From contig NW_025964279.1 in the NCBI RefSeq assembly GCF_023055435.1, positions 2,666,001 to 2,730,000 on the forward strand: 64,000 bases of DNA, given 5' to 3'. This document shows, one piece after another, positions 2,465 to 62,974 of this stretch. How positions within the stretch are numbered: position 1 is the first letter of the stretch; each line of letters starts with the position of its first letter. Below the pieces are notes generated by a model, which was given only the letters and a program-made list of their open reading frames with translations, was not told where the DNA came from and did no database searches. Made by a program: the position numbers and the translations under genes. This stretch comes from Haliotis rufescens. Taxonomy: Eukaryota.

Positions 2465-2746
2465 CTGTTGACAGGCCGGAGCTCGTCCACGTGACTCTTC
2501 GTGTCACGCCAAGCAAGATGAATATCTGTCTCCGGGTGAAGTTGAACGAGAGCCGGCGCGTGCCACCACTTAACTAGGCGTGCGCTGATTGGCTGTGTGT
2601 ATCGGATCGCGCCGGGCTATTCAGATGTCAAAACATAACTGTACATAGATTAGCGTGGGTAGGGGAATGTTGGGGGTATAAAGGCGGGTCGGGAGGCTGC
2701 GTTCCATCACACTAACTTGTCCCTCAGAGCTGAACACATCGCAGTG
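2465..2746 (+). promoter_or_regulatory. Proximal promoter/5'UTR of Hes paralog 1
   Basis: TATAAA 2677-2682; reverse CCAAT (ctgattggc); class-C Hes site GGCGCGTGCC 2555-2564; TGACAG. Lacks the 44-bp block with CGTGAGAA found in the other four copies. Confidence 0.8.
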
Positions 2747-3966
2747 ATGGAATCTTACTTTGATAACATGGAATCTGACAGTGAATATATGGGCCGAAGA
2801 AAGGTAAGCATCAATTTACTCTTTTAAATAACTTTCAAATGGACTGCTTACAACTTATAAATAACATGTGCTTGTTTACATTTAAAACACGTGGCTAATT
2901 TAATATTCATGAGAAATGGGAATAGACTGTGTTTGTCCCTTTTCTCAGCACACAAGAGTTCTTTCAAAACTTATATTTTGATATTCTGAAATATTGTATG
3001 CAAATATGAAGGAATTTCTCATCAATCTATTTATTTTCTCCAGGGTCGAAAGATGATGGCCGAAAAACGTCGACGAGCCAGAATCAACCAAAGCCTGTCA
3101 AAAATCAAAAGCATCGTGTGTGCGGCACATCAACGAAATGTAAGTGGCTCCCTTTGATCAAATCCATGTTCACCATCTATTTTCCCAGCAAGATTACTCA
3201 TTTAAAAAAATAAATATATCTATTTCTTTTTCATTTACAACAGAAGTTGCGTGTTTTAAAATATACAATTTAATAAGATGAAATATTTTCTTCAATTTCT
3301 CAGCCTTGTTTATTTATTGTTATTAAATTTTTCCAGGACCCAAACTATGACAAGATGGAGAAGGCCGAGATTCTGGAGACGACTGTAGATTATCTGAGGA
3401 ATGTCAGGAAGATCAACACCACACATCAACACGTGAAAGAAGCAGTTCAAGCCAGATTCCATCATGGCTTCTCCAAATGTGCTGAAGAAATACTCTCCTA
3501 CATTCAGTCTCTGCCAGGAGTGTCGGACAATGTACACCATCAGCTGAGAAAACACATCTCTCGACGTATGACGCACATTCAGCAGGTGCCCGCGACGTCA
3601 TCAACAGATGATGTGACGTCATACACAAGTCAGTGCTCCGAGCGACTGAGAACAGTACCTTCCCACAATTCCAAATATCAACATCCTGCTGCACATGCGT
3701 ACATGAACAGGACAGTGTGCACTTCCCCCGTGAAGGAGGACAATAGTTTTTCAGACAGTGGATATGCTGGTTCTCCTGAAAGTGTCAAACAATCCACCCC
3801 AAGAACCGGACGCTATCACTCCAGTCTCTCGTATTCAGAACTTAGATGTAAAGTACCGTCAGAAATGGTTGACAAAGACTCGAGAGTGAGAGCGTGGCTC
3901 CAGAGCACGTGGTCCTACTCACAGCAGATTAGGACGGAGCAACAGGTTCCATGGAGGCCCTGGTAA
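2747..3966 (+). CDS. Hes: HES-family bHLH-Orange-WRPW repressor, paralog 1; exons 2747-2803, 3044-3139, 3337-3966; 260 aa
   Basis: GT-AG phase-0 introns join MESYFDNMESDSEYMGRRK / GRKMMAEKRRRARINQSLSKIKSIVCAAHQRN / DPNYDKMEKAEILETTVDYLR. This is followed by an Orange domain (RFHHGFSKCAEEILSYIQSLPGVSDNVHHQLRKHI) and C-terminal WRPW. The 96-nt exon 2 and intron positions match the HES1-type layout. Confidence 0.96.
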
Positions 3967-4041
3967 AATGCTCCATGCAACTTTATATTTTGGACACGTC
4001 ATAATGGTGCTTCTTTATATCGGTCTTTTCATATACATTGT

Positions 4042-4049
4042 CTGTGATA
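4042..4049 (+). promoter_or_regulatory. K-box (CTGTGATA, miR-2-family seed match) in paralog 1 3'UTR; also at 11914-11921, 29233-29240, 42830-42837
   Basis: Exact cTGTGATa 47-114 nt after the stop codon in four paralogs. Confidence 0.65.
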
Positions 4050-4451
4050 AATTATATTTGTAGATAAAGATGTATTATTTAACTCTTGTATCCTTCGTTG
4101 TTTTTACGGATTCATGATGCGCCTATTCTAATCAAGATGTACTGGTGTATGTACTAGTGCACCTTGGTTAGAATAGTTTTCCAAGAATCAGGTCTGCTAG
4201 CTGTCGATCCATAATAAATACGAGTTAAGTAGTAAAATATTATTATCCTTTGTTCTGTCGTCACCTATCAGAAGGAAAACAGATTCTGACAATGAGCATC
4301 TGAAACATCTGAGCATTTTATCCAACAACAGTTTGTTTTAACCACAAACACGTGTGTATTGTTCAGACATGTGGATACACAGTTACACAATTAAATATTT
4401 CATTGTTTGATAGGCATTACTTAGAAGTTGACGGGAGACAAGAAAGACACA

Positions 4452-10139: not shown

Positions 10140-10467
10140 ATTGTTGACAGGCCGGGTGCTCGGCCACGTAACTCCTCGTGTCACGCCAAGCAAGAAGCTC
10201 TCTGCTCCTGAAGAAAATCATCCCTGTCGGGTCGTGAGAAGAACATCTGTCTCCGGGTGAAGTTTAACGCGATCCGGCGCGTGCCACCACTTAGCAAGGT
10301 GTGCGCTGATTGGCTGCGTGTATCGGATCGCGCCGGGCTATTCAGATGTCAAAACATAACTGTGCATAGATTAGCGTGGGTAGGGGAATGTTAGGGGTAT
10401 AAAGGCGGGTCGGGAGGCTGCGTTCCATTACACCAACTTGTCTCTCACAGCTGAACACATCGCAGTG
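10140..10467 (+). promoter_or_regulatory. Proximal promoter/5'UTR of Hes paralog 2
   Basis: TATAAA 10398-10403; Su(H)/CSL site CGTGAGAA 10233-10240; class-C site 10276-10285; N-box (CTCGTG); reverse CCAAT. Confidence 0.8.
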
Positions 10468-11822
10468 ATGGAATCTTACTTTGATAACATGGAATCTGAC
10501 AGTGAATATATGGGCCGAAGAAAGGTAAGCATCAATTTACTCTTATAAAAAAAGTTTCAAATGGTCTGTTTATAATGTGTAAATTACATGTGCTTGTTCG
10601 TGACTGAAACACGTGGCTAATTTAATATTCATAGGTATGGGAATAGACTGTGGGTTTTTCCCTTTCTCAATACTCTAAATAAGTATTCTTTTTGTCTGTC
10701 TTACATTCAAGTCTATAATAATTGGCAAGTCTAGATTACTGCAGTACCAGGGTGAAGAGAGTCTCTGGTCTTTTTATTATATTTTTATTAAGATAATTTA
10801 ACAACTGTTTTCTGTAGGATATGTTCATTTCAGAGACTAGAGTCATGCGAAGCGTTCTTTCAGAACATATATTTTGATAACCTGAAATATTATATGCAAA
10901 CATGAATACATTTCATATGAAACTGTTTTTTTCTCCAGAGTCGAAAGATAATGGCTGAAAAACGGCGACGAGCTAGAATCAACCAAAGCCTGTCAACAAT
11001 CAAAAGCATCTTGTGTGCGGCACATAAACGAAGTGTAAGTAGCTCCCTTTGATGTTTACAATCTATATTCACATTCACATACTCCTATTTCAAATTAAAG
11101 ACGGAAATAATATCTTTCTTGTTTTTAAAAATAATTTCTTAAATATCACGATGTATGCCTTGGTTATTTATTGTTATTAATTTTTCCAGGACCCCAACTA
11201 TGAGAAGATGGAGAAGGCCGAGATTCTGGAGACGACTGTAGATTATCTGAGGAACGTCAGGAAGATCAGCACCACACATCAACACGTCAAAGAAGCAGTT
11301 CAAGCCAGATTCCAACATGGCTTCTCCAAATGTGCTGAAGAAATCCTCTCCTACATTCAGTCTCTGCCAGGAGTGTCGGACAATGTACATCGTCAGCTGA
11401 GGAAACACATCTCTCGACGTATGATGCACATTCAGCAGGTGCCCATGACATCATCAACAGATGATGTGACGTCATACACAAGTCAGTGCTCCGAGCGACT
11501 GAGAACAATACCCTCCCTCAATGTCCAATATCAACATCCGGCTGCGCCAGCGTACATGAACAGGACAGTGTGCACTTCCCCTGTGAAGGAGGACAATAGT
11601 TTCTCAGACAGTGGATATGCTGGTTCTCCTGATAGTGTCAAACAATCCACCCCCAGAGCCGGACACTATCACTCACTTAATCTCTCAGATTCAGAACTTA
11701 GTTGTAAAATACCATCAGAAATGGTTGACAAAGACTCGAGAGTGAGGGCGTGGCTCCAGACCACGTGGTCCTACTCACAGCAGATCAAGACGGAGCAACA
11801 GGTTCCATGGAGACCCTGGTAA
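10468..11822 (+). CDS. Hes: HES-family repressor, paralog 2; exons 10468-10524, 10939-11034, 11190-11822; 261 aa
   Basis: Same structure as paralog 1; exon 2 SRKIMAEKRRRARINQSLSTIKSILCAAHKRS; Orange domain; WRPW; no frameshifts or stops. Confidence 0.95.
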
Positions 11823-17919: not shown

Positions 17920-18264
17920 AATTGTTGACAGGCAGATTGTTGACAGGACGGGTGTTCATTTACGTTAGGCCTCGTGTCACGCCAAGCAAGATGCTCCCTG
18001 CTCCTGAAGAATATCATCCCTGTCGGGTCGTGAGAAGAACATCTGTCTCTTGGTGATGTTTAACGAGAGCCGGCGCGTGCCACCACTTAAGCTAGGCGTG
18101 CGCTGATTGGCTGCGTGTATCGGATCGCGCCGGGCTATTCAGATGTCAAAACATAACTGTGCATAGATTAGCGTGGGTAGGGGAATGTTAGGGGTATAAA
18201 GGCGGGTCGGGAGGCCGCGTTCCATCACACTAACTTGTCTCTCAGAGCTGACAACATCGCAGTG
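17920..18264 (+). promoter_or_regulatory. Proximal promoter/5'UTR of Hes paralog 3
   Basis: TATAAA 18195-18200; CGTGAGAA 18029-18036; class-C site 18072-18081; locally duplicated ATTGTTGACAGG. Confidence 0.8.
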
Positions 18265-19624
18265 ATGGAATCTTACTTTCAAAACACGGAACCTGGCAGT
18301 GAATATATGGGCCGAAGAAAGGTAGGCTTGCTCATATCATTAAGTTTCAAATGCACTGTTTACAACCTCTAAATAATATGTGCTTGTTTACACCACGAAC
18401 ACGTGGCTAATTTCATAATCATGAGAAATGGGAATAGACTGTGTCCCAGTCGTTATATTTGATAGAATCACGTGTCGTGATCTTCATTGCATTTACATTC
18501 ACATCGTTGTTTCATTCTGATCTGGGTTTTTTCAGGGTCGAAAGTTAATGGCTGAAAAACGGCGACGAGCCAGAATCAACCAGTGTCTGTCAGAAATCAA
18601 GGGCATCGTGTGTGGAGCTCATCAACAAAATGTAAGTATTCTTACTTATATTTAACTAAGTATTTACATCTCATTTTAATGTCAGTTTACTTGTTGATAT
18701 ATATGAAAATTTTCACGAATGTTTTTTTCTATAGACCCAAGGGATGAAAAACGTATGATAGTTTTGGTGATAATAGCTGAACCACAAAATACGCTCATCT
18801 TTAAGCGATCACCTGGTGTCATCACTAATTGATATATAAAATATATTGAAATATAAACACTTATTTCTGACATTGGTATGTTTATCGTCGTTGGCTTGAT
18901 TTTCAAACTATCTATATTTTGAAACAATTTACGCGTCTTTTATATTACTATAATTCAATTACATAATTTATTGTCATTGTTCAAGGACCCAAACTATGAC
19001 AAGATGGAGAAGGCCGAGATTCTGGAGACGACCGTAGATTATCTGAGGAACGTCAGGAAGATCAGCACCACACATCAACACGTCAAAGAAGCAGTTCAAG
19101 CCAGATTCCAACATGGCTTCTCCAAATGTGCTGAAGAAATCCTCTCCTACATTCAGTCTCTGCCAGGAGTGTCGGACAATGTACACCGTCAGCTGAGAAA
19201 ACACATCTCTCGACGCACGACGCACATTCAACAGGTGCCCGTGACGTCATCAACAGATGATGTGACGTCATACACAAGTCAGTGCTATGAGAGACTGAGC
19301 GCAGCGCCTTCCCACAGTTCCCAATATCAACATCCGGCTGCGCCAGCGTACATGAGAAGGACAGTGTGCACTTCCCCCGTGAAGGAGGACAATAGTTTCT
19401 CAGACAGTGGATATGCTGGTTCTCCTGACATTATCAAACAATCCACCCCCAGAACCGGACACTATCACTCATCCAATCTTTCAGATTCAGAACTTTGTAA
19501 AATGGAGTCGAGCAGAATCCACAAAAACTTTGATGACTCGAGAGTGAGGGCGTGGCTCCAGAGTACGTGGTCCTACTCTCAACAAATCAAGACGGAGCAA
19601 CAGGTTCCATGGAGGCCGTGGTGA
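18265..19624 (+). CDS. Hes: HES-family repressor, paralog 3; exons 18265-18321, 18536-18631, 18986-19624; 263 aa
   Basis: Exon 1 MESYFQNTEPGSEYMGRRK; exon 2 GRKLMAEKRRRARINQCLSEIKGIVCGAHQQN; exon 3 acceptor is ttcaag (AAG rather than CAG); WRPW. Confidence 0.94.
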
Positions 19625-27314: not shown

Positions 27315-27647
27315 GGCGGATTGTTGACAGGCCGGGTGCTCGTCCTCGTAACTCCTCGTGTCACGCCAAGCAAGATGCTCCTTGCACCTGAAGAATATCA
27401 TCCCTGTCGGGTCGTGAGAACAACATCTGTCTCGGGGTGAAGTTTAACGCGAGCCGGCGCGTGCCACCACTTAGCTAGGCGTGCGCTGATTGGCTGCGTG
27501 TATCGGATCGCGCCGGGCTATTCAGATGTCAAAACATAACTGTGCATAGATTAGCGTGGGTAGGGGAATGTTGGGGGTATAAAGGCGGGTCGGGAGGCCG
27601 CGTTCCATCACACTAACTTGTCCCTCAGAGCTGACCACATCGCAGTG
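27315..27647 (+). promoter_or_regulatory. Proximal promoter/5'UTR of Hes paralog 4
   Basis: TATAAA 27578-27583; CGTGAGAA 27413-27420; class-C site 27456-27465. Confidence 0.8.
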
Positions 27648-29119
27648 ATGGAATCTTACTTTCATAACACGGAATCCGACAATGAATATATGGGCCGAAG
27701 AAAGGTAGGCATTAGTTTGCTCATATAATTAAGTTTCAAATGGTCTGTTTACCACTTGTAAATTGCACGTGACTAATTTGATGGGAATAGACTGTGTCCC
27801 AGTCGTGTAGTTCATAGAAACTCCGTGTCGTAATTTTTTATAGGATTTACCTTCAAACTGTCATTCTACTTGGAACACGTGGCCAATGCACTATTCGTGT
27901 GAAATGGGAAAAATCCGATCTTCTCTTTTACCTAGAAACATTTTTATCTTCATGGAAATAGGGCACATCTTCAAACAATATTTCATATTTTGTTTATTAA
28001 TTAATCTCTTTATCTTACAGGGTCGAAAATTAATGGCTGAAAAACGGCGACGAGCCAGAATCAACCAGAGTCTGTCAGAAATCAAAGGCATCGTGTGTCG
28101 AGAGCAACAACAAAATGTAAGTATTGTCACATTTCAGTGATCTGGGACAGACTTTGTCATAATCATATACACCCGTGAAGATCCGGGGTAGAATAGGTCT
28201 TCAGCAACCCATGCTTTCGTAAAAGTAAAAGTGACTATGCTTGTCGTCAGAGGCGACTAACGGGATCCCAGTTTCGTGGATCGATTCTCATGATGTCAAT
28301 CACTGGACTGTCTGGTCCAGACTCGATTATTTACAGGCCGCCGTCAAAAAGCTGGAATATTGCTGAGTTAGCAACAAACAAACAAAACAAACACAATAAT
28401 ATCCACCGATACGCAAGTGCTATTTCTCCTCTACACAATATATAACATGTATTTATGTTATTATTATTCCGTTTTTCCAGGACCCCAATTATGACAAGAT
28501 GGAGAAGGCAGAGATTCTGGAGACGACTGTAGATTATCTGAGGAACGTCAGGAAGATCAACACCACACATCAACACGTCAAAGAAGCAGTTCAAGCCAGA
28601 TTCCAACATGGCTTCTCCAAATGTGCTAAAGAAATCCTCTCCTACATTCAGTCTCTGCCAGGAGTGTCGGACAATGTACACCATCAGCTGAGAAAACACA
28701 TCTCTCGACGCATGACGCACATTCAACAGGTACACGTGACGTCATCAACAGATGATGTGACGTCATACACAAATCAGTGCTATGAGAGACTGAGCGCAGT
28801 GCCTTCCCGCAATTCCCAATATCCACATCCGGCTGCGCATGCGTACATGAACAGGACAGTGTGCACTTCCCCCGTGAAGGAGGACAACAGTTTCTCAGAC
28901 AGTGGATATGCTGGTTCTCCTGACATTATCAAACAATCCACCCCCAGAACCGGACACTATCTCTCATCCAATCTCTCAGATTCAGAACTTTGTAAAATGG
29001 AGTCGAGAAGAATCCACAAAAACTTTGATGACTCGAGAGTGAGGGCGTGGCTCCAGAGTACGTGGTCCTACTCTCAACAAATCAAGACGGAGCAACAGGT
29101 TCCATGGAGGCCCTGGTGA
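27648..29119 (+). CDS. Hes: HES-family repressor, paralog 4; exons 27648-27704, 28021-28116, 28481-29119; 263 aa
   Basis: Exon 1 MESYFHNTESDNEYMGRRK; exon 2 GRKLMAEKRRRARINQSLSEIKGIVCREQQQN; WRPW; intron 2 contains a retroposon. Confidence 0.95.
28171..28390 (+). mobile_element. Short retroposon family B in intron 2 of Hes paralog 4
   Basis: Consensus match with an internal deletion. Confidence 0.82.
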
Positions 29120-41084: not shown

Positions 41085-41420
41085 TGAGGCGGATTGTTGA
41101 CAGGCCGGGTGCTCGGCCACGTAACTCCTCGTGTCACGCTGAGCAAGATGCTCCCTGCTCCTGAAGAATATCATCCCTGCCGGGTCGTGAGAAGAACATC
41201 TGCTTCCGGGTGAAGTTTAACGCGAGCCGGCTCGTGCCACCACTTTGCTAGGCGTGCGCTGATTGGCTGCGTGTGTCGGATCGCGCCGGGCTATTCAGAT
41301 GTCAAAACATAACTGTGCATAGATTAGCGTGGGTAAGGGAATGTTGGGGGTATAAAGGCGGGTCGGGAGGCTGCGTTCCATCACACTAACTTGTCTCCCA
41401 GAGCTGAACACATCGCAGTG
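41085..41420 (+). promoter_or_regulatory. Proximal promoter/5'UTR of Hes paralog 5
   Basis: TATAAA 41351-41356; CGTGAGAA 41186-41193; class-C site changed to N-box GGCTCGTGCC 41229-41238. Confidence 0.8.
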
Positions 41421-42783
41421 ATGGAATCATTCGATAGACACACGGAATCAGACTCGGAATATATTGGATATAGAAAGGTACACATTGTTTTTATTTGGTT
41501 TCTGTCAGTGAACAGAAAGTCAATTTTTGGGCTTTTACAAATATCGACGCCCTCCCATATTCACGTAGCTAATGAATTAATCATGAATACTACTGCTATT
41601 TGCATCTTGCCAAATTCACATCTCTCCCCTTTACAGTAATAACTAGTTATAATTCTGAGGAACACGATATTGTCCTGTATATATATTATTTAATTATATA
41701 CTGTAACAAAATACTCATGCTGATATATTATTTTCTCCAGGGTCGAAAACTGTTGGCAGAAAAACGGCGACGGGCCAGAATCAACCAATGTATGTCAGAA
41801 ATCAAGGGCATCGTTTGTGGGGCAGAGCAAAAAAACGTAAGCATATTATTTTAAATTTATTTCAGTTTTCTATTTCTTAAGCTGTGTGAAAGGCAGCGTT
41901 CATCGTTTAATAACCTTAGATACGACATGTATTGATTTTAGGGGTTATTAAATCTTTTTTTATATCTTTGTAATGGAATAGAAGTAATGTACCGGTAAAT
42001 GAAATACAATTCCTAATTTACTTGTATTTGTTTTCAAAATCGTTTATTGTTTTGTATCTATGCTTTTCTATATATACATAACATACAACGTACTAATATT
42101 TTGTCATCCGTTTTTTCCAGGACCCCAACTATGAGAAGATGGAGAAGGCCGAGATTCTGGAGACGACTGTAGATTATCTGAGGAACGTCAGGAAGATCAA
42201 CACCACACATAAACACGTCAAAGAAGCAGTTCAAGCCAGATTCCAACATGGCTTCTCCAAATGTGCTGAAGAAATCCTCTCCTATGTTCACTCTCTGCCA
42301 GGAGTGTCGGACAATGTACACCGTCAGCTGAGAAAACACATCTCTCGACGTATGACGCACATTCAGCAGGTGCCCGTGACGTCACCAACAGGGAATGTGA
42401 CGTCACACCCAAGTCAGTGCCATGAGCGACTGAGAACAATACCCTCCCACAGTTCCCAGTTTCCACATCCGGCTGCGCATGCGTACATGAGCAGGACAGT
42501 GTGCACTTCCCCCGTGAAGGAAGACAACAGTTTCTCAGACAGTGGATATGCTGGTTCTCCTGATTTTATCAAACAATCAACCCCCAGAACCGGACATTCT
42601 AATCTCTCAGATTCAGAACTGTGCAAAATGGAACCTAAAAGTTCCAACACAAACTTTGACGATTCAAGGGTAAGGGCGTGGCTCCAGAGCACGTGGTTCT
42701 ACTCTCAGCAAATGAAAATGGAGCCCTATGGTCGTGCAGCCCTTCGATCGCCAACAACAGGCGACGTTTGGCGACCATGGTGA
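41421..42783 (+). CDS. Hes: HES-family repressor, paralog 5 (most divergent); exons 41421-41477, 41741-41836, 42121-42783; 271 aa
   Basis: Exon 1 MESFDRHTESDSEYIGYRK; exon 2 GRKLLAEKRRRARINQCMSEIKGIVCGAEQKN; distinct C-terminus MKMEPYGRAALRSPTTGDVWRPW. Confidence 0.95.
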
Positions 42784-55930: not shown

Positions 55931-56436
55931 CATCTTCCTGAGGCAAGGGAGTTAACTGACTATGAAAGTCCAGTTTCCACCCTTGCAGAACTAGAATTAT
56001 GGAGTTATATTTTGGCTGGACTAGTGAGTCTATGCATTGTCCAATAAAAATGCATAACAAAATCCTTCCTGGTTTGCAAACTGCTGTGCAGATTTTGGTC
56101 AATTGCAGGACTTGGAAAGCATGTGTACTGCCAACTAGATGACAACAGATATTTTCCAAATCTTTTCTTGTTTTTAATCCAGATTTGGTGCATTTTATCA
56201 CAATATAGATTTTGATTATCAATCAGATCTTCTTGACCCGGCACAGCCATTTAGTTCAAAGCAAATGCAAGTGATATCTGAGGTAGAATCTGATTAGTCA
56301 ATAGGAGGGACTTAGAAGGGACATAACTGGTAATTTCCACTGGTGGCGCTTTGGTCGAGACCAGAAATTCCAGCCTAGTTCGGCAAGGGTAGAAACTACT
56401 TTTACAGTCAGTTAACTCCCTTGCCTCAGGAAGATG
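55931..56436. mobile_element. Non-autonomous TIR element (related pieces at 31663-31990 and 21410-21450)
   Basis: ~31-bp TIR CATCTTCCTGAGGCAAGGGAGTTAACTGACT / AGTCAGTTAACTCCCTTGCCTCAGGAAGATG. Confidence 0.7.
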
Positions 56437-56569
56437 AGATGGACCACATATTGCAAGGAGTAAAACATGGTGTAGAAGCAGCAGGAATATCCTCACGTTC
56501 TTGTATGTCGATGTCAGCTTTCTTTAATATTTGATATTTTTACGTGTCCTACTTTTACTAAGGGCCAGG

Positions 56570-57630
56570 CCATTTGATATTCTGAGGGTTAGGTGAATAT
56601 TCTGATGGGGTAGGGATACTCTGTTTGGGTGGGGATACTCTGATAGGGTGGGTATATTCTCAGGTTGGGGGTATATTCTGAAGGGGTGGGAATATTTTGG
56701 AGAAGGGTGGGGATATTCTGATGAGGTGGGGGATATTCAGAGGGGTTGGGATACTGTGAGGGGTGGAGTTTAGTCTGAGGTGTTAAGGCTATTCTGGAGG
56801 GGTGGGGATATTCTGACAGGAAGGGATATTCTGAGGGAAGTGGGAATATTCTGAGGGGGTAGGGATATTCTGAATGGATGGGGATATTCTGAGGGGGTGG
56901 GGATATTCTGAGGGGAGTGGGGATATTCTGAGGGGGTGGGGATATTCTGAGGGGAGTGGGAATATTCTGAGGGGGTAGGGATATTCTGAATGGATGGGGA
57001 TATTCTGAGGGGGTGGGGATATTCTGAGGGAAGTGGGAATATTCTGAGGGGGTGGGGATATCCTGAGGGGAGTGGGAATATTCTGAAGGGGTGGGGATAT
57101 TCTGAATTGATGGGGATATTCTGAGGGGAGTTGGAATATTTTGAGGGGATGGGGATATCCTGAATGAATGGGGATATTATGAAGGGGTGGGGATATTCTG
57201 AGGGGAGCGGGAATATTCCGAGGGGGCGGGGGTATTCTGAATAAATGGGGATATTCTAAGGGGAAGGGATATTCTAAGGGGTGGGGATATTATGAGGGGG
57301 TGGGGATATTCTGGAGGGTTTGGGATATTCTGAGGGGAGGGGGAAAATTCTGAATGGGTGGGTATATTGAGGAATTGAGGATATTTTGTGGGGGTGGGGA
57401 TATTCTTATGGGGTGGGGATATTATTCTGGGGTGTAGGGATATTCTGAAGGGTAGGTGATATTCTGAGGTATTGAGGATATTCTGAAGGGGTAGGGATAT
57501 TCTGGAGGGGTGGGGATATTCATAGGTGTTGATATTCTGAGGGGTAGGTTTATTCTGAAGGGGTATGGATATTAGGAGGGGTAGGGATATTCTGACGGGT
57601 TGGGGAATTTTCTGAGGGGTTGGAGTTTGG
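56570..57630. repeat. G-rich minisatellite, ~20-21-bp unit GGGGATATTCTGAGGGGGT
   Basis: Direct inspection; most homogeneous in the centre, degenerate at the edges. Confidence 0.92.
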
Positions 57631-57874
57631 GAAATATCAGCCAAAAACACAAAAATCACTTTGACCCAATTTAGTTTCAGTAGCTTGCGTACAAATATGT
57701 ATGGGAAAAAGGACAAAAGTATGGAATAAAAGTCAAATATTATGCATACGGTATTAAATGTTACTAATAAAGGTCAAATACAAAACAAACAGACGCTGAT
57801 TAAAATATACAGTTGAAATACGGTCAAAAGTATGCAATATTAAGAGTCAAATGTAAAGAAAAAGGTCATTTGAA

Positions 57875-58885
57875 AATCTGCTGGTTTGATCAACTGGTTA
57901 GATCAACTGTTTATATCAGCTGCTTTGATCAACCGCTTTAATCAACTAGCGTTATCAGCTGGTGTAATCAACTGGTCTCATCTGCTGGTTTGATCAACTG
58001 GTTAGATCAACTGTTTATATCAGCTGGTTTGATCAACTGTTTATATCAGCTGGTTTGATCAACTGTTTATATCAGCTGGTTTCATCTGCTGGTTTGATCA
58101 ACTGGTTAGATCAACTGGTTAGATCAACTGTTTATATCAGCTGGTTTGATCAACTGTTTATATCAGCTGGTTTGATCAACTGTTTATATCAGCTGGTTTC
58201 ATCTGCTGGTTTGATCAACTGGTTAGATCAACTGTTTATATCAGCTGGTTTGATCAACTGTTTATATCAGCTGGTTTCATCTGCTGGTTTGATCAACTGG
58301 TTAGATCAACTGTTTATATCAGCTGGTTTGATCAACTGCTTTAATCAACTAGTGTTATCAGCTGGTGTAATCAACTGGTCTCATCTGCTGGTTTGATCAA
58401 CTGGTTAGATCAATTGTTTATATCAGCTGGTTTGATCAATTGCTTTAATCAACTAGTGTTATCAGCTGGTGTAATCAACTGGTCTCATCTGCTGGTTTGA
58501 TCAACTGGTTAGATCAACTGTTTATATCAGCTGGTTTGATCAACTATTTATATCAGCTGGTTTCATCTGCTGGTTTGATCAACTGGTTAGATCAACTGTT
58601 TATATCAGCTGGTTTGATCAACTGTTTAAATCAACTGGTTTGATCAACGGTTTATATCAGCTGGTTTCATCTGCTGGTTTGATCAACTGGTTAGATCAAT
58701 TGTTTATATCAGCTGGTTTGATCAACTGTTTAAATCAGCTGGTTTGATCAACGGTTTATATCAGCTGGTTTCATCTGCTGGTTTGATCAACTGGTTAGAT
58801 CAACTGTTTATATCAGCTGGTTTGATCAACTGTTTATATCAGCTGGTTTCACCTGCTGGTTAGATCAACTGGTTAGATCAACCTG
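57875..58885. repeat. Minisatellite built from 13-bp subunits (CTGGTTTGATCAA / CTGTTTATATCAG / CTGGTTTCATCTG)
   Basis: Direct inspection; short degenerate version at ~59800-59940. Confidence 0.92.
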
Positions 58886-58946
58886 AAGAAGACTAGCATT
58901 CAGGTGTGTACTTCAATAATTATCTTTTTCAATTTGTTTTTTCAAG

Positions 58947-59000
58947 GATGACTATTTGACCAACGTCAGTGAACATACATATGGCGCCCCAAGGCTTGAG
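58947..59000 (+). CDS. 54-nt phase-0 exon DDYLTNVSEHTYGAPRLE (unknown gene)
   Basis: tttgttttttcaag acceptor; GAG/gtaagt donor; paralogous to 60001-60054 with synonymous and conservative differences. Confidence 0.7.
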
Positions 59001-60000
59001 GTAAGTTGTCTTCATATCTGTTTATTCCTTGTTTGGTGGTTGGGTTTGGTAGTAGGGTTTGGTAGTGGGGCTTGGTAATAGGGTTTGGTAGTGGGGTTTG
59101 GTAATAGGTTTTGAAGAAGGGTTTGGTGGTAGGGTTTGGTATCGTGGTTTGGTAATAGGGTTTGATAGTAGTGTTTGAAGAAGGGTTTGGTGGTGGCCCA
59201 GATAGCACATTTGGCCTATGTTGGGCCAATGTTATCACTTTCGTTAGGCCAACGTTGGCTGGGCCAGCGTTGGGCCAACGTTTCCTTGCCAACGTTGTAG
59301 CAACGTTCACCCAACATTAATCATGTTAATTACTGTAATCTTTAGCCAACGTTAGGACAATGATCTTTAGCCAATGTTGTTTTTTCAGAAAATATCAAAA
59401 TCAACCTTTGCACTGCACCTCTCCTATTAGGATAGAAAGTGTTCCTTAAATTTGGACAGAATCCATGTGGTAGTCCTCAAGTTATAGGTAGCACAATTGT
59501 TGAATTAAAAATACATTCTGAGTTCAAAACACGTAAAAAATCATGTTGTTTCATAAAATACACATATTAAAATCAAACTTTGCACTTCATCTCTCCAATC
59601 AGTATAAAAAGTGTTCCTTACATTTGGACAGAATCAATGTGGTAGTTCTCAAGTTATAGGTAGCACAATTGTAGCAAAAAGTATTTAAAAAAACCCCCCA
59701 ATATAGGTAATTATGAATGCAGGCATCATGTCCATAAATATTAGCACTACTTAATGCGTCCTACAACATCAAACATATGTAATGGTTTCTGGTTTGATGC
59801 TGATCAACAGGCTTGATCAATTGGCTTAATCAAATGTTTTAATCAACTGGTTTAATCAACCGGTTTAATCAACCGGTGTAATCTGCTGGTGTTATTAACC
59901 GGTTTAATCAACTGGTTAGATGAACTGATTTGATCAACCTGAAGGAGACAAGCAATCAGGTTTGAACTTTAATAATTTTTTAATAATTTGTTTTTTCAAG

Positions 60001-60054
60001 GACGACTATTTGTCTAATATCAGTGAACAAACATATAGCGCCCCAAAGTTGGAG
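60001..60054 (+). CDS. 54-nt phase-0 exon DDYLSNISEQTYSAPKLE (duplicate exon)
   Basis: Same acceptor and donor as 58947-59000; 13 of 18 aa identical; no indels. Confidence 0.7.
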
Positions 60055-60084
60055 GTAAGTCTTCTTCATATCAGTATGTTCCTA

Positions 60085-61042
60085 GTTTGATAGTTGGGCC
60101 TGGTAGTGGGGCCTGGTATTGGGGCGTGGTAGTGGGGCCTGGTAGTGGGGCCTGGTAGTGGGGTTTGGTAGTGGGGCCTGGTAGTGGGGCCTGATAGTGG
60201 GGCCTGGTAGTGGGGCCTGGTAGTGGGGTTTGGTAGTGGGGCCTGGTAGTGGGGCCTGATAGTGGGGCCTGGTAGTGGGGCCTGGTAGTGGGGTTTGGTA
60301 GTGGGGCCTGGTAGTGGGGCCTGGTAGTGGGGCCTGGTAGTGGGGTTTTGGTAGTGGGGCCTGATCGTGGGGCCTGGTAGTGGGGCCTGGTAGTGGGGTT
60401 TGGTAGTCGGGGCTGGTAGTCGGGCCTAGTAGTGGGGCCTGGTGGTGGGGCCTGGTGGTGGGGCCTGGTAGTGGGGTTTGGTAGTCGGGCCTGGGAGTCG
60501 GGCCTGGTAGTCAGGTTTGTTAGTCGGGCCTGGTAGTGGGGCCTGGTGGTGGGGCCTGGTAGTGGGGCCTGGTAGTGGCGCCTGGTAGTGGGGCCTGGAA
60601 GTGGGGCCTGATAGTGGGGCCTGGTATTGGGGCATGGTAGTTGGGCCTGGTAGTTGGGCCTGGTAGTGGGTCCTGGTGGTGGGGCCTGGTGGTGGAGTTT
60701 GGTAGTGGGGCCTGGTAGTGGGGTTTGGTAGTCGGGCCTGGTAGTGGGGTTTGGTAGTCGGGCCTGGTGGTGGGGCCTGGTGGTGGGGCCTGGTGGTGGG
60801 GCCTGGTAGTGGGGTTTGGTAGTGGGGCCTGGTGGTGGGGCGTGGTAGTGGGGCCTGGTGGTGGGGCCTGGTGGTGGAGTTTGGTAGTGGGGTTTGGTAG
60901 TGGGGTTTGGTAGTGGGGCCTGGTAGTGGGGCGTGGTAGTGGGGCCTGGTGGTGGGGCCTGGTATTGGGGCGTGGTAGTGGGGCCTGGTGGTGGGGCCTG
61001 GTAGTGGGGCCTGGTGGTGGGGCCTGGTAGTGGGGCCTGGTA
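60085..61042. repeat. 13-bp G-rich minisatellite (GGTAGTGGGGCCT)n
   Basis: Direct inspection; short degenerate version at ~59030-59200. Confidence 0.95.
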
Positions 61043-62974
61043 CTCTGACTGGAAAGCGGAAGGATTGGGGTTCAATCCCCGGCTGCATCATACTAAAAGA
61101 CGTTAAAAGATGGTACTTGTTGTAACCCTGCCTGGTGCTCGGCATTAAGGGGCTAAAACAAGGACTGGTCGGCTCTGAGTTTGAATACTAGCTGTGTCTG
61201 AGTGGGGTATTCATGTTAAACTGTTGCATGGTGTCTCAGTGGGCTAGCACTATAAATTGGCATCTGTTCGGACAAGTAAAAGCAGCCACACACGTGCATG
61301 CATGTCACTATACAAGTGCAATAATATTGGACTCGACGTTAAATCCCATTTCACCTCACGCCTCCACCTCAAAGCTTTAAGTCCTGATCATAAAGGCAGG
61401 TAGATGTGATGCAAGTCATGTTGTAGAAGACCTTGAATCACCCTACTGTCATTCTTATAAAGGCACGCCCACCTTTCCAGAAGCTGTCACATCACAAAAT
61501 GAACAAGTCTGTTTTGCTCTTGTGGCCAAATTTGTTGCAACCTTCTCAAAGTACCAAAATATTTATCAACTTTCTTTTTTAGAAAACATTTCATGTCACA
61601 AAGTAATTTTTTTTAATTTTGAAGGAAATTAGTTCTTCTTTTAATTCCAATTCCTTTAATTTGAAATCTCTCCCTTCTCTTTCTCGTCCAAGTCTGTTGT
61701 GTTGATTGATACACAAGCAGGGTAGGTAACTCTAATTCACTTGCTGCCAAGGCAACAACCAAAGCTTTGACCACCTCAGTCATTTTATGCCATTTACCAA
61801 AATCTACTGCCACATGACAATATTGACACAATTTTGCAATTACCCAGTTTGGTAACACTGACTGCCATTACCTTTGTGCCTTGTTAGCCGATGGAACATG
61901 AGTGATTTCACACAAAAACTGCACAAACTATCACAATATGTATTGACACGGGAAGTAGATGTATCGTGATACCTCTTCTCTACAGAGTGCTCAGTGCTCA
62001 GAAAATTATGATAATTAGTTATGGCTCTCTGATAATTTCTAATCCAGATAGTTCTTTACCTTGGGGGGCACGGGTGGCACAGTCGTCTAGGGCGCCGCGA
62101 TTTGCTGTGCAGAGTTGCGCCCCTTGGGCACTCCATCCTCTACTAGCAAGAGAGCCGGCGGGTGAAACAAAAAAAATAAAAATTGTTTTTCACTAATTGT
62201 GTAATTTATTTTTTGAAATTTAAAAGTTTAAAAGACTTGACAAAAGTCTTTCAATTAATATATGATATAGATCTAGTAGCTTGGCTTTGGAAACAAATCT
62301 TTCATAAATGTAGCAAACCACAATGAGTGACCAATGGTAGGTGTATTATTTTATCCCATCAGGGCAAAAAATTTCCACATCGGGGAAAATTGAGATTAGA
62401 AAACTTTTTATTGTTTCACGTCAGAATAAAAATTCAGGGCAGGGGGAAGATGGGAAACACAGAAAAGAGTATGGACAGCATTTTTATTTGTAGATCCAAT
62501 GCGGATATATCCGGGACTAAATGTTTGTCTGGAGTCATATTTGTTGTACAGTTTAACTGGTTCTCTTCATCTGAGATGAAATTTAAATTTTAAGTTTGTC
62601 TGAATAGGTTCTCCATATTTATAAATTTTAGAGAATAATATGTATGTGAAATTACTTTGGTTTGGCCACATAGTTGTGTGTTTGTTGTTTCTCATAACCG
62701 ACATTGAAAACAATCATCTTGACTGAAAACTTTACAATTTTTCAGTTACTGCTAAATTTGGCTCCTGTTTCGCATTTTTAGAGTTATTCCTGGGGCCTGT
62801 CCTGATGACCAGCAATATATTGTTTGTAATTTTCCAGAACGGTGGTAATGTTATACTTCTGCATAAATATAATCCAATTGAATATTCATGCATATTTATT
62901 TGTAATAATATATTTGTATGACTCATGCTTATTAAATGACAATAACATGAGTATGATGACATTTTAATTTTCAG

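What the first reader, a model, noticed from the sequence alone, without database searches (positions are those of the whole stretch)
3044..3139. All five paralogs lack the Hes-diagnostic basic-region proline
Established: Hes proteins have KP(I/L)MEKRRRARIN and Hey proteins have glycine at the proline position; this residue is linked to N-box/class-C versus E-box preference. Seen: RK-M-MAEKRRRARIN (1), RK-I-MAE (2), RK-L-MAE (3, 4), RK-L-LAE (5). The Pro is replaced by a hydrophobic residue that varies between copies, and M is replaced by A before EKRRR, while Orange and WRPW are intact. Inference: an atypical Hes subfamily with possibly altered DNA specificity, for example towards class-B CACGTG, which is frequent in the cluster's conserved modules.
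Basis: partly seen in the sequence, partly recalled or inferred. Interest (0 to 1): 0.75.

Follow-up and report, generated by a model that had tools for sequence, protein, structure and literature searches.

The report
Proline-less Hes repressor genes of gastropods
The abalone gene cluster encodes real, expressed Hes-type repressors that lack the family's hallmark DNA-binding proline, and the same change marks a conserved Hes branch in many snails and limpets, so it is an old natural variant whose effect on DNA recognition is still untested.

Summary
Window 3044-3139 is exon 2 of the first of five tandem three-exon HES genes. The genome is Haliotis rufescens, and the cluster has seven genes in the whole genome. 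All five genes encode bHLH, Orange and a C-terminal WRPW. At basic-region position 6, where Hes proteins have Pro, they have M, I, L, L and L. Position 8 is Ala instead of Met, and positions 3-4 are G/S-R instead of S-S/N.

Exon 2 is the true exon. My exon pieces equal RefSeq proteins for paralogs 1, 4 and 5. Contigs of probable RNA runs cover exons only and carry GT..AG joints at 2803|3044 and 3139|3337.

The trait is not an abalone oddity. RKG[RK]KL[LM]AEK[KR]RR also occurs in three other Haliotis species, Gigantopelta, Patella caerulea (five genes with near-consecutive locus tags) and ten heterobranch species. These proteins form one clade (100/99) even with the trait columns removed. Of 229 readable basic regions retrieved, 193 have Pro, 35 have L/I/M (all in this clade) and 1 has His. 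No caenogastropod or non-gastropod member was seen. The same genome keeps seven canonical KP Hes loci.

K5, E9 and R13 are kept, so DNA binding is expected. I found no paper describing this clade.

The parts
2747..2803 (+). Paralog 1, exon 1 (MESYFDNMESDSEYMGRRK; ends with basic positions 1-2, R-K)
   Evidence: GT donor. The piece equals the start of RefSeq protein P0001. Contigs cover it.
3044..3139 (+). Paralog 1, exon 2 (the finding): basic positions 3-17 plus helix 1. The position-6 codon ATG (Met) is at 3053-3055 and the position-8 codon GCC (Ala) at 3059-3061.
   Evidence: HLH 7-28, E 7.9e-5; joints 2803|3044 and 3139|3337.
3337..3966 (+). Paralog 1, exon 3: helix 2, Orange, C-terminal WRPW and the stop codon
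   Evidence: Hairy_orange E 1.2e-7; 100% identical to P0001.
10468..10524 (+). Paralog 2, exon 1
10939..11034 (+). Paralog 2, exon 2 (SRKIMAEKRRRARIN; position-6 codon ATA at 10948-10950)
   Evidence: A contig in run X2 carries the paralog-2 letter at the exon 1-2 joint (table 5c).
11190..11822 (+). Paralog 2, exon 3 with Orange, WRPW and stop
18265..18321 (+). Paralog 3, exon 1
18536..18631 (+). Paralog 3, exon 2 (GRKLMAEK; position-6 codon TTA at 18545-18547)
18986..19624 (+). Paralog 3, exon 3 with Orange, WRPW and stop
27648..27704 (+). Paralog 4, exon 1
   Evidence: the pieces equal P0004.
28021..28116 (+). Paralog 4, exon 2 (GRKLMAEK; position-6 codon TTA at 28030-28032)
   Evidence: A loose end in X3 before 3337 matches the end of this exon (table 7).
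28481..29119 (+). Paralog 4, exon 3 with Orange, WRPW and stop
41421..41477 (+). Paralog 5, exon 1
   Evidence: the pieces equal P0015.
41741..41836 (+). Paralog 5, exon 2 (GRKLLAEK, the form closest to non-Haliotis members; position-6 codon CTG at 41750-41752)
42121..42783 (+). Paralog 5, exon 3 with Orange, DVWRPW end and stop

Best explanation
Shown: the five genes belong to a seven-gene tandem cluster of intact, spliced and transcribed Hes-type bHLH-Orange-WRPW genes in Haliotis rufescens. They belong to a conserved Hes subfamily seen only in gastropods. [quoted passage not shown] That form has since been held nearly invariant.

Inferred: K5, E9, R13 and the RRxR backbone-contact residues are all kept. 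The proteins should therefore still bind CACG(T/C)G-type class B/C sites as dimers and repress through WRPW-Groucho, probably as Notch targets with autorepression. Without the proline the basic helix can run on through the extra N-terminal basic residues. I therefore expect a more rigid E-box reader, more like group B bHLH proteins. It should tolerate the degenerate N-box half-site less well, and it lacks the phosphorylatable serines. This last step is a prediction, not a result.
For: Gene reality: GT/AG at all ten introns. The exon pieces equal RefSeq proteins P0001, P0004 and P0015. Contigs lie on exons only in X2-X4, with GT..AG joints.

Domains.

Cluster size and canonical Hes in the same genome. 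Of 17 Orange loci, 7 are Pro-less, 7 have KP, 1 is Hey-type, 1 is Dec/Stich-type and 1 is undetermined.

Distribution. Members occur in Haliotis x4, Gigantopelta, Patella caerulea x5, Aplysia, Elysia x2, Plakobranchus, Lymnaea, Physella, Bulinus, Biomphalaria, Bradybaena x2 and Candidula.

One clade: 24 of 24 Pro-less rows group together with support 100/99 when basic positions 3-8 are dropped.

Constraint: R, K, G, K, L, A, E, K, R, R, R, I and N are invariant across seven sequences from four gastropod subclasses. Among the five paralogs, K5, A8, R11, R13 and A14 differ only synonymously.

Helix: the AF2 model of P0001 has helix 14-46 running through the basic region. The model of canonical Patella HES-1 starts its helix at residue 29, two residues after P27.

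Regulation: a Su(H)-type site lies at -235 in four of five promoters and a class C site at -190 in four of five.

Against: There is no binding, expression-pattern or functional data for any member. Both AF2 models are of low confidence (mean pLDDT 49 and 57; 49-73 over the basic region), were made without DNA and used shallow alignments. The run kind is only guessed as RNA. The exon 1-2 joints have short sides (19-30 letters), and X1 shows slight depth in intron 1. Canonical E(spl) proteins already prefer CACGTG, so the proline may matter little for core-site choice. I recall, but could not retrieve, a Drosophila study reporting that hairy tolerates replacement of this proline in vivo. No caenogastropod member was seen, so 'gastropod-wide' implies a loss or a gap in the data. 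The stem of the clade is long (2.37). Its sister position next to insect E(spl) is flagged as long-branch attraction.
Confidence: 0.6

Rival explanations
1. The proline loss is functionally silent. These proteins bind the same class B/C and N-box sites as canonical Hes. The clade differs only in expression or partners, and the conserved Leu simply fills the position.
For: The base-contacting K5, E9 and R13 are unchanged. E(spl) and Hes already bind CACGTG and CACGCG (passages). The promoters keep a class C site like other Hes targets.
Against: Four positions of the basic region changed together (3, 4, 6, 8). They then stayed nearly invariant across four gastropod subclasses, which suggests a selected new state rather than drift. 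Pro is kept in 193 of 194 readable basic regions outside the clade.
Confidence: 0.3
2. The proteins no longer bind DNA usefully. They act as dimerisation partners or antagonists of canonical Hes, in the manner proposed for HES6, or as DNA-independent corepressors.
For: Hes proteins can act without DNA binding, and HES6 antagonises HES1 (passages). The genome keeps seven canonical Hes loci that could be partners.
Against: The whole basic region, including E9, R10-R13 and R15, is conserved under synonymous-only change. That is not expected for a region without a DNA-binding role.
Confidence: 0.07
3. The feature is an artefact: a wrong exon 2, pseudogenes, or assembly duplication of one gene.
For: None beyond the high similarity of the copies.
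Against: Spliced contigs join exon 1, exon 2 and exon 3. Paralog-specific letters are seen in those contigs. The ORFs are intact with distinct sequences. Orthologous sets exist in three other Haliotis genomes, and the same motif occurs in distant gastropods.
Confidence: 0.01

Closest known systems
Canonical Hes / Hairy / E(spl) proteins (for example human HES-1, PDB 2mh3)
   Same: They share bHLH plus Orange plus a C-terminal WRPW. K5, E9 and R13 and the motif EKRRRARIN are the same, and P0001 aligns without gaps to HES-1 (E 2.2e-12). Introns fall at the same two bHLH positions as in canonical Hes loci of the same genome. The genes are tandemly clustered. The promoter carries Su(H)-type and class C sites.
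   Different: Position 6 is L/I/M rather than the 'invariant' Pro. Position 8 is Ala rather than Met. Positions 3-4 are G-R/K rather than S-S/N. Helix 1 ends ..xI instead of ..xL.
Hey / HERP proteins
   Same: They are bHLH-Orange repressors that lack the Hes proline, and they bind class B E-boxes (passages).
   Different: Hey has Gly at position 6, EKRRRDRIN, and YRPW plus TEIGAF instead of WRPW, and it does not recruit TLE. The abalone Hey-type locus is elsewhere in the genome (L004/L020).
HELT and Dec/Stich/Clockwork-orange proteins
   Same: They are group E bHLH-Orange proteins without Pro at position 6. That detail is recalled for HELT. [quoted passage not shown]
   Different: They have no WRPW, and they are different families in trees (PMC4172395, PMC8166818, passages). 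The abalone Dec/Stich-type locus L011 reads HRIIEKRRRDRMN.
Group B bHLH proteins (Myc/Max/USF/MITF type)
   Same: They have a continuous basic helix with a basic residue at position 5, E9 and R13, and they read CACGTG. MITF is the only other PDB sequence hit (E 0.0022).
   Different: They have no Orange domain and no WRPW, and they carry leucine zippers. They are not relatives in the tree sense. The likeness is only in how the basic region might work.

Membership tests
Hes (Hairy/E(spl)) family | bHLH domain | tested here: met
   exon 2 hits Pfam HLH positions 4-29 above the cut-off in all five paralogs, and exon 3 hits positions 33-51. HES-1 at E 2.2e-12.
Hes (Hairy/E(spl)) family | Orange domain following the bHLH | tested here: met
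   Hairy_orange at 28.4-33.6 bits (cut-off 25.3) in all five exon 3 pieces.
Hes (Hairy/E(spl)) family | C-terminal WRPW tetrapeptide | tested here: met
   WRPW is immediately followed by a stop codon in all five.
Hes (Hairy/E(spl)) family | Proline at basic-region position 6 | tested here: not met
   M, I, L, L, L. The feature is called invariant in PMC1950541. It is the one hallmark that fails, while phylogeny still nests the clade among lophotrochozoan Hes (96/98).
Hes (Hairy/E(spl)) family | Two conserved intron positions inside the bHLH coding sequence | tested here: met
   Exon 2 runs from basic position 3 to the loop. It does so in the Pro-less genes and in canonical Hes loci of the same genome (L001, L005, L006, L018, L019, L021, L022). 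Gazave 2014 describes two homologous bHLH introns in Platynereis Hes1-10 (passage).
Hes (Hairy/E(spl)) family | Groucho/TLE recruitment and transcriptional repression | not testable with these tools
   This is inferred from WRPW only.
Hey family | Gly at position 6, with a YRPW/YxxW end | tested here: not met
   there is no Gly at position 6, and the end is WRPW.
Group B bHLH (as a way of working, not as kinship) | Basic residue at position 5, E9 and R13, with an unbroken basic helix | tested here: inconclusive
   K5, E9 and R13 are present. The unbroken helix appears only in a low-confidence AF2 model made without DNA.

The most novel reading that the evidence does not exclude
An ancestor of living gastropods converted one Hes lineage from the 'proline' class of bHLH repressors into a Groucho-recruiting repressor with a continuous, more basic recognition helix like that of group B proteins. 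This gave a distinct DNA-site repertoire: strict class B/C E-boxes with new flank contacts, and loss of N-box tolerance. It split the Notch/Hes output into two non-equivalent repressor channels. The new channel was then amplified by tandem duplication in abalones and limpets.
Probability: 0.3. Interest if true: 0.65.

Novelty: new variant of a known kind. Interest (0 to 1): 0.45.

Why it matters
Reviews treat the basic-region proline as the invariant hallmark that sets Hes proteins apart. It is the basis of Murre's class VI and of group E. It is also invoked to explain their unusual site preference. A whole conserved clade of WRPW-bearing Hes proteins without it is a natural experiment on what the proline does. 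The clade spans four gastropod subclasses and sits beside canonical copies in the same genome. Simple swap experiments (L6P, P6L) with PBM or SELEX would test a decades-old assumption. It also gives a clean molecular marker for sorting the poorly resolved molluscan Hes expansions noted by Bao et al. 2017 and Gazave et al. 2014. Without binding data it remains a sequence-level curiosity in genes that are already annotated.

Tried and rejected
1. A different, proline-bearing exon 2. The six-frame scan of the whole window found no KP-type basic region, and the contigs join the exons as modelled. Rejected.

2. A trait private to Haliotis. Rejected.

3. A trait common in spiralian Hes. The nearest bivalve (Mya, Dreissena, Mactra, Mizuhopecten), annelid (Owenia), nemertean (Lineus) and unnamed hits all have KP. 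The third protein search, on the bHLH part of the Gigantopelta protein alone, scored 26 candidates and gave 11 hits, all gastropods already seen.

4. Literature. Six searches found no description of a proline-less WRPW Hes. I read passages only, not whole texts. 'Proline' occurs 0 times in PMC4172395 and PMC5381572. It occurs once in PMC8166818, in an unrelated sense, and once in PMC8429573, where the proline is named as HES-specific. The supplementary alignments of these papers are closed and could show the residue without comment.

5. The Drosophila study I recall on substituting the hairy proline could not be retrieved by DOI or by a recalled PMC id. It is cited as recall only.

6. AF2 models are too uncertain to carry weight. 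No fold search was made.

7. The PDB search with exon 2 alone gave only HES-1 plus a chance lectin hit. No solved bHLH-DNA complex is close enough to place residue 6.

8. In one search, the joints 2811>2886 (X1, CA..AA) and 3779>3892 (X2, AA..GA) are not splice-like. I take them for cross-laid paralogs or errors.

9. For the tree I chose 55 of the 259 proteins in hand. These were 24 of the 35 readable Pro-less proteins and 31 of the 193 Pro-bearing ones, taken as named species representatives and top-scoring unnamed hits. The rest were left out.

10. The basic exon of locus L012 was not found within 10 kb upstream.

Full report
WHAT IS THERE. The window is from Haliotis rufescens: exon 3 of the first gene is 100% identical to a 260-aa RefSeq protein of that species (P0001). 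A six-frame scan finds five EKRRRARIN sites and five WRPW-stop ends, all on the + strand. Each gene has three exons with GT/AG at both introns. Exon 1 is 19 aa and ends in R-K. Exon 2 is 32 aa and holds basic positions 3-17 and helix 1. Exon 3 holds helix 2, Orange and WRPW. The finding's coordinates, 3044-3139, are exon 2 of paralog 1.

I searched the spliced model exon by exon and left the joined step out. Pfam puts all five exon 2 pieces on HLH profile positions 4-29. It puts all five exon 3 pieces on HLH 33-51 plus Hairy_orange, all above the cut-offs. Taken piece by piece, my exons equal RefSeq proteins P0001, P0004 and P0015 for paralogs 1, 4 and 5. Paralogs 2 and 3 had no exact partner among the proteins retrieved.

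Numbering the basic region so that the invariant Glu is position 9, canonical Hes read R-K-S-S/N-K-P-I/L-M-E. The five paralogs read R-K-G/S-R-K-(M/I/L/L/L)-(M/M/M/M/L)-A-E. HMMER aligns P0001, and also exon 2 alone, to human HES-1 (PDB 2mh3) without gaps, K-P-I-M-E over K-M-M-A-E. Among the paralogs, K5, A8, R11, R13 and A14 differ only at synonymous sites. Amino-acid change in the basic region is confined to positions 3, 6 and 7.

IS EXON 2 THE TRUE EXON? Four coded runs of guessed RNA kind were laid on 2700-4100. In X2, X3 and X4, contigs lie on the three exons, and the bins inside both introns are empty. X1 has slight depth (0.12-2.8) in intron 1. A GT..AG joint equal to 2803|3044 stands in one contig each of X2 and X3, with short sides of 28 and 19 letters. 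A GT..AG joint at 3139|3337 stands in X2 (two contigs), X3 (one) and X4 (one, side 37). One X2 contig carries the paralog-2 letter at the exon 1-2 joint. Loose ends match the exon 2 end of paralog 4 and the C-terminus of paralog 5. So several copies are transcribed and spliced alike. Adapter letters abut position 2723 in X2 and X3, about 35 nt after the TATAAA, which probably marks the transcript start. These are contigs, so they say nothing about expression level.

HOW FAR DOES THE TRAIT REACH? In the genome, the Orange profile finds 17 loci. Seven lie in one cluster on contig C501: five in the window and two upstream (L013 DRKLIAEK, L015 GRKLMAEK), and all seven lack the proline. Seven other loci have a canonical KP basic exon (L001, L005, L006; and, after fetching 10 kb upstream, L018, L019, L021, L022). 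One locus is Hey-type (YRPW, IIEKRRRDRIN), one is Dec/Stich-type (L011), and one stayed undetermined.

Outside the genome, I ran a profile of 19 family members against 1.84 billion representatives. It gave 2102 hits at E <= 1e-3. The scores fall steeply after the family, from 533 to 369, 261 and 186, and then to 137 bits and less. Two word-indexed searches added named proteins. Across all 259 proteins retrieved, 229 have a readable basic region. Of these, 193 have Pro, 35 have L/I/M and 1 (unnamed P0148) has His. All 35 also have Ala8 and R/K4.

The 35 come from Haliotis rufescens, H. cracherodii, H. asinina and H. rubra, and from Gigantopelta aegis (Neomphalina). They also come from Patella caerulea (Patellogastropoda), with five genes bearing near-consecutive locus tags. 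The rest are heterobranchs: Aplysia, Elysia marginata and E. chlorotica, Plakobranchus, Lymnaea, Physella, Bulinus, Biomphalaria, Bradybaena (two genes) and Candidula. Every non-Haliotis member has Leu at position 6 and the motif RKG[RK]KLLAEKKRR. No caenogastropod and no non-gastropod member appeared. The nearest bivalve hits read KRSNKPFMEKKRR.

ONE ORIGIN. I built a maximum-likelihood tree of 55 chosen proteins (24 Pro-less and 31 Pro-bearing). It kept 138 of 195 columns, with the columns for basic positions 3-8 removed. All 24 Pro-less rows fall on one side of a branch with support 100/99. They lie inside a 96/98 group of mostly lophotrochozoan Hes. Within Haliotis, the paralog-5 type (LL, DVWRPW end, like Gigantopelta) branches first. 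The stem is long. The apparent sisterhood with insect E(spl) (85/32) is flagged as long-branch attraction, and I do not trust it. The root was set on two cnidarian rows.

HOW IT LIKELY WORKS. K5, E9 and R13 and the surrounding arginines are kept and constrained, so DNA binding to CACG(T/C)G-type sites is expected. WRPW implies Groucho-dependent repression. Both points are inferred from family knowledge (passages).

[quoted passage not shown] The helix-breaking Pro is gone. A basic residue replaces Ser/Asn at position 4. The serines, whose PKC phosphorylation blocks HES-1 binding (passage), are gone too.

AF2 models agree with a longer helix but are weak. In P0001 the helix runs 14-46, through the whole basic region (pLDDT 49-73). 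In canonical Patella HES-1 the helix starts at residue 29, two residues after P27 (pLDDT about 60). I therefore expect a more rigid reader, more like group B proteins, with less tolerance for N-box half-sites. This is a prediction only.

The promoters look like Notch-target Hes promoters. A CGTGAGAA site lies at -235 in paralogs 2-5 and is missing in paralog 1. GGCGCGTGCCACC (class C) lies at -190 in paralogs 1-4, where paralog 5 has an N-box-type CTCGTG. CCAAT and TATAAA boxes follow.

'Towards class-B CACGTG' is not supported as a shift, because proline-bearing E(spl) proteins already prefer CACGTG. Also, the conserved proximal site is class C. CACGTG is nevertheless enriched in the window, 35 against 11.3 +/- 3.0 in 100 first-order Markov simulations. 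It is conserved in intron 1 of paralogs 1-4 next to a TAATT-like motif.

KNOWN OR NEW. The proteins are already in RefSeq and GenBank under generic names: HES-1-like, HES-7.1-A-like, enhancer of split m7/m8/mbeta/mgamma-like, and protein hairy. Tandem Hes clusters in gastropods are also known (PMC5381572 and PMC4172395, passages). Six literature searches found no mention of a proline-less WRPW clade. I read passages only, and supplementary alignments were closed. I class this as a new variant of a known kind.

VERDICT. My confidence of 0.6 is for the whole best explanation. The shown part (real, expressed, conserved gastropod Pro-less Hes clade) I hold at about 0.9. The inferred change in DNA reading I hold at about 0.3. 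Interest is moderate (0.45). It is a clean, testable exception to an 'invariant' hallmark, but it has no functional data yet.

Noticed in passing
window 2510-2535 versus 10233-10240, 18029-18036, 27413-27420, 41186-41193: A Su(H)/CSL-type site, CGTGAGAA, sits 235 nt before the ATG in paralogs 2-5. It is absent from paralog 1, which lacks about 40 bp there.
   Followed up: partly
window 2557-2562 and the matching -190 positions of paralogs 2-4; paralog 5 at about 41231: A conserved class C site lies inside GGCGCGTGCCACC in four of five proximal promoters. Paralog 5 has CTCGTG (N-box type) at the same place. It is a candidate autoregulatory site.
   Followed up: partly
window 2888, 10610, 18400, 27766: Intron 1 of paralogs 1-4 holds a conserved CACGTG followed by (g/a)ctaatt. 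CACGTG occurs 35 times in the window against 11.3 +/- 3.0 in simulations. Three further copies are simply coding sequence (QSTW) in exon 3.
   Followed up: partly
window 2723: Illumina adapter letters abut this position in contigs of two runs. This is the probable transcript 5' end, about 35 nt after the TATAAA box at about 2680 (table 7).
   Followed up: no
G000:C501:2649680-2660001 (loci L013, L015), upstream of the window: Two more members of the same cluster lie here, so there are seven tandem Pro-less HES genes in about 59 kb, all on the same strand.
   Followed up: partly
window 17991-18029, 27375-27413, 41148-41186: A conserved short ORF, ML(P/L)APEEYHPCRV, followed by GTGAG lies about 270 nt upstream of the ATG in paralogs 3-5. 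It overlaps the Su(H)-type site and is most likely promoter sequence that happens to be open, not an exon.
   Followed up: no
window 56001-62000: There is strong GC skew here (0.49 and 0.33), a GC rise to 0.53 and negative AT skew, unlike the rest of the window.
   Followed up: no
proteins P0024-P0026, P0030, P0173-P0183: Heterobranch and Patella members of the Pro-less clade carry no precomputed Pfam Orange hit, although the region aligns (RYASGFSSCAEE...). Patella members are short (180-218 aa) and have Asn at basic position 14 (RRNRIN).
   Followed up: no
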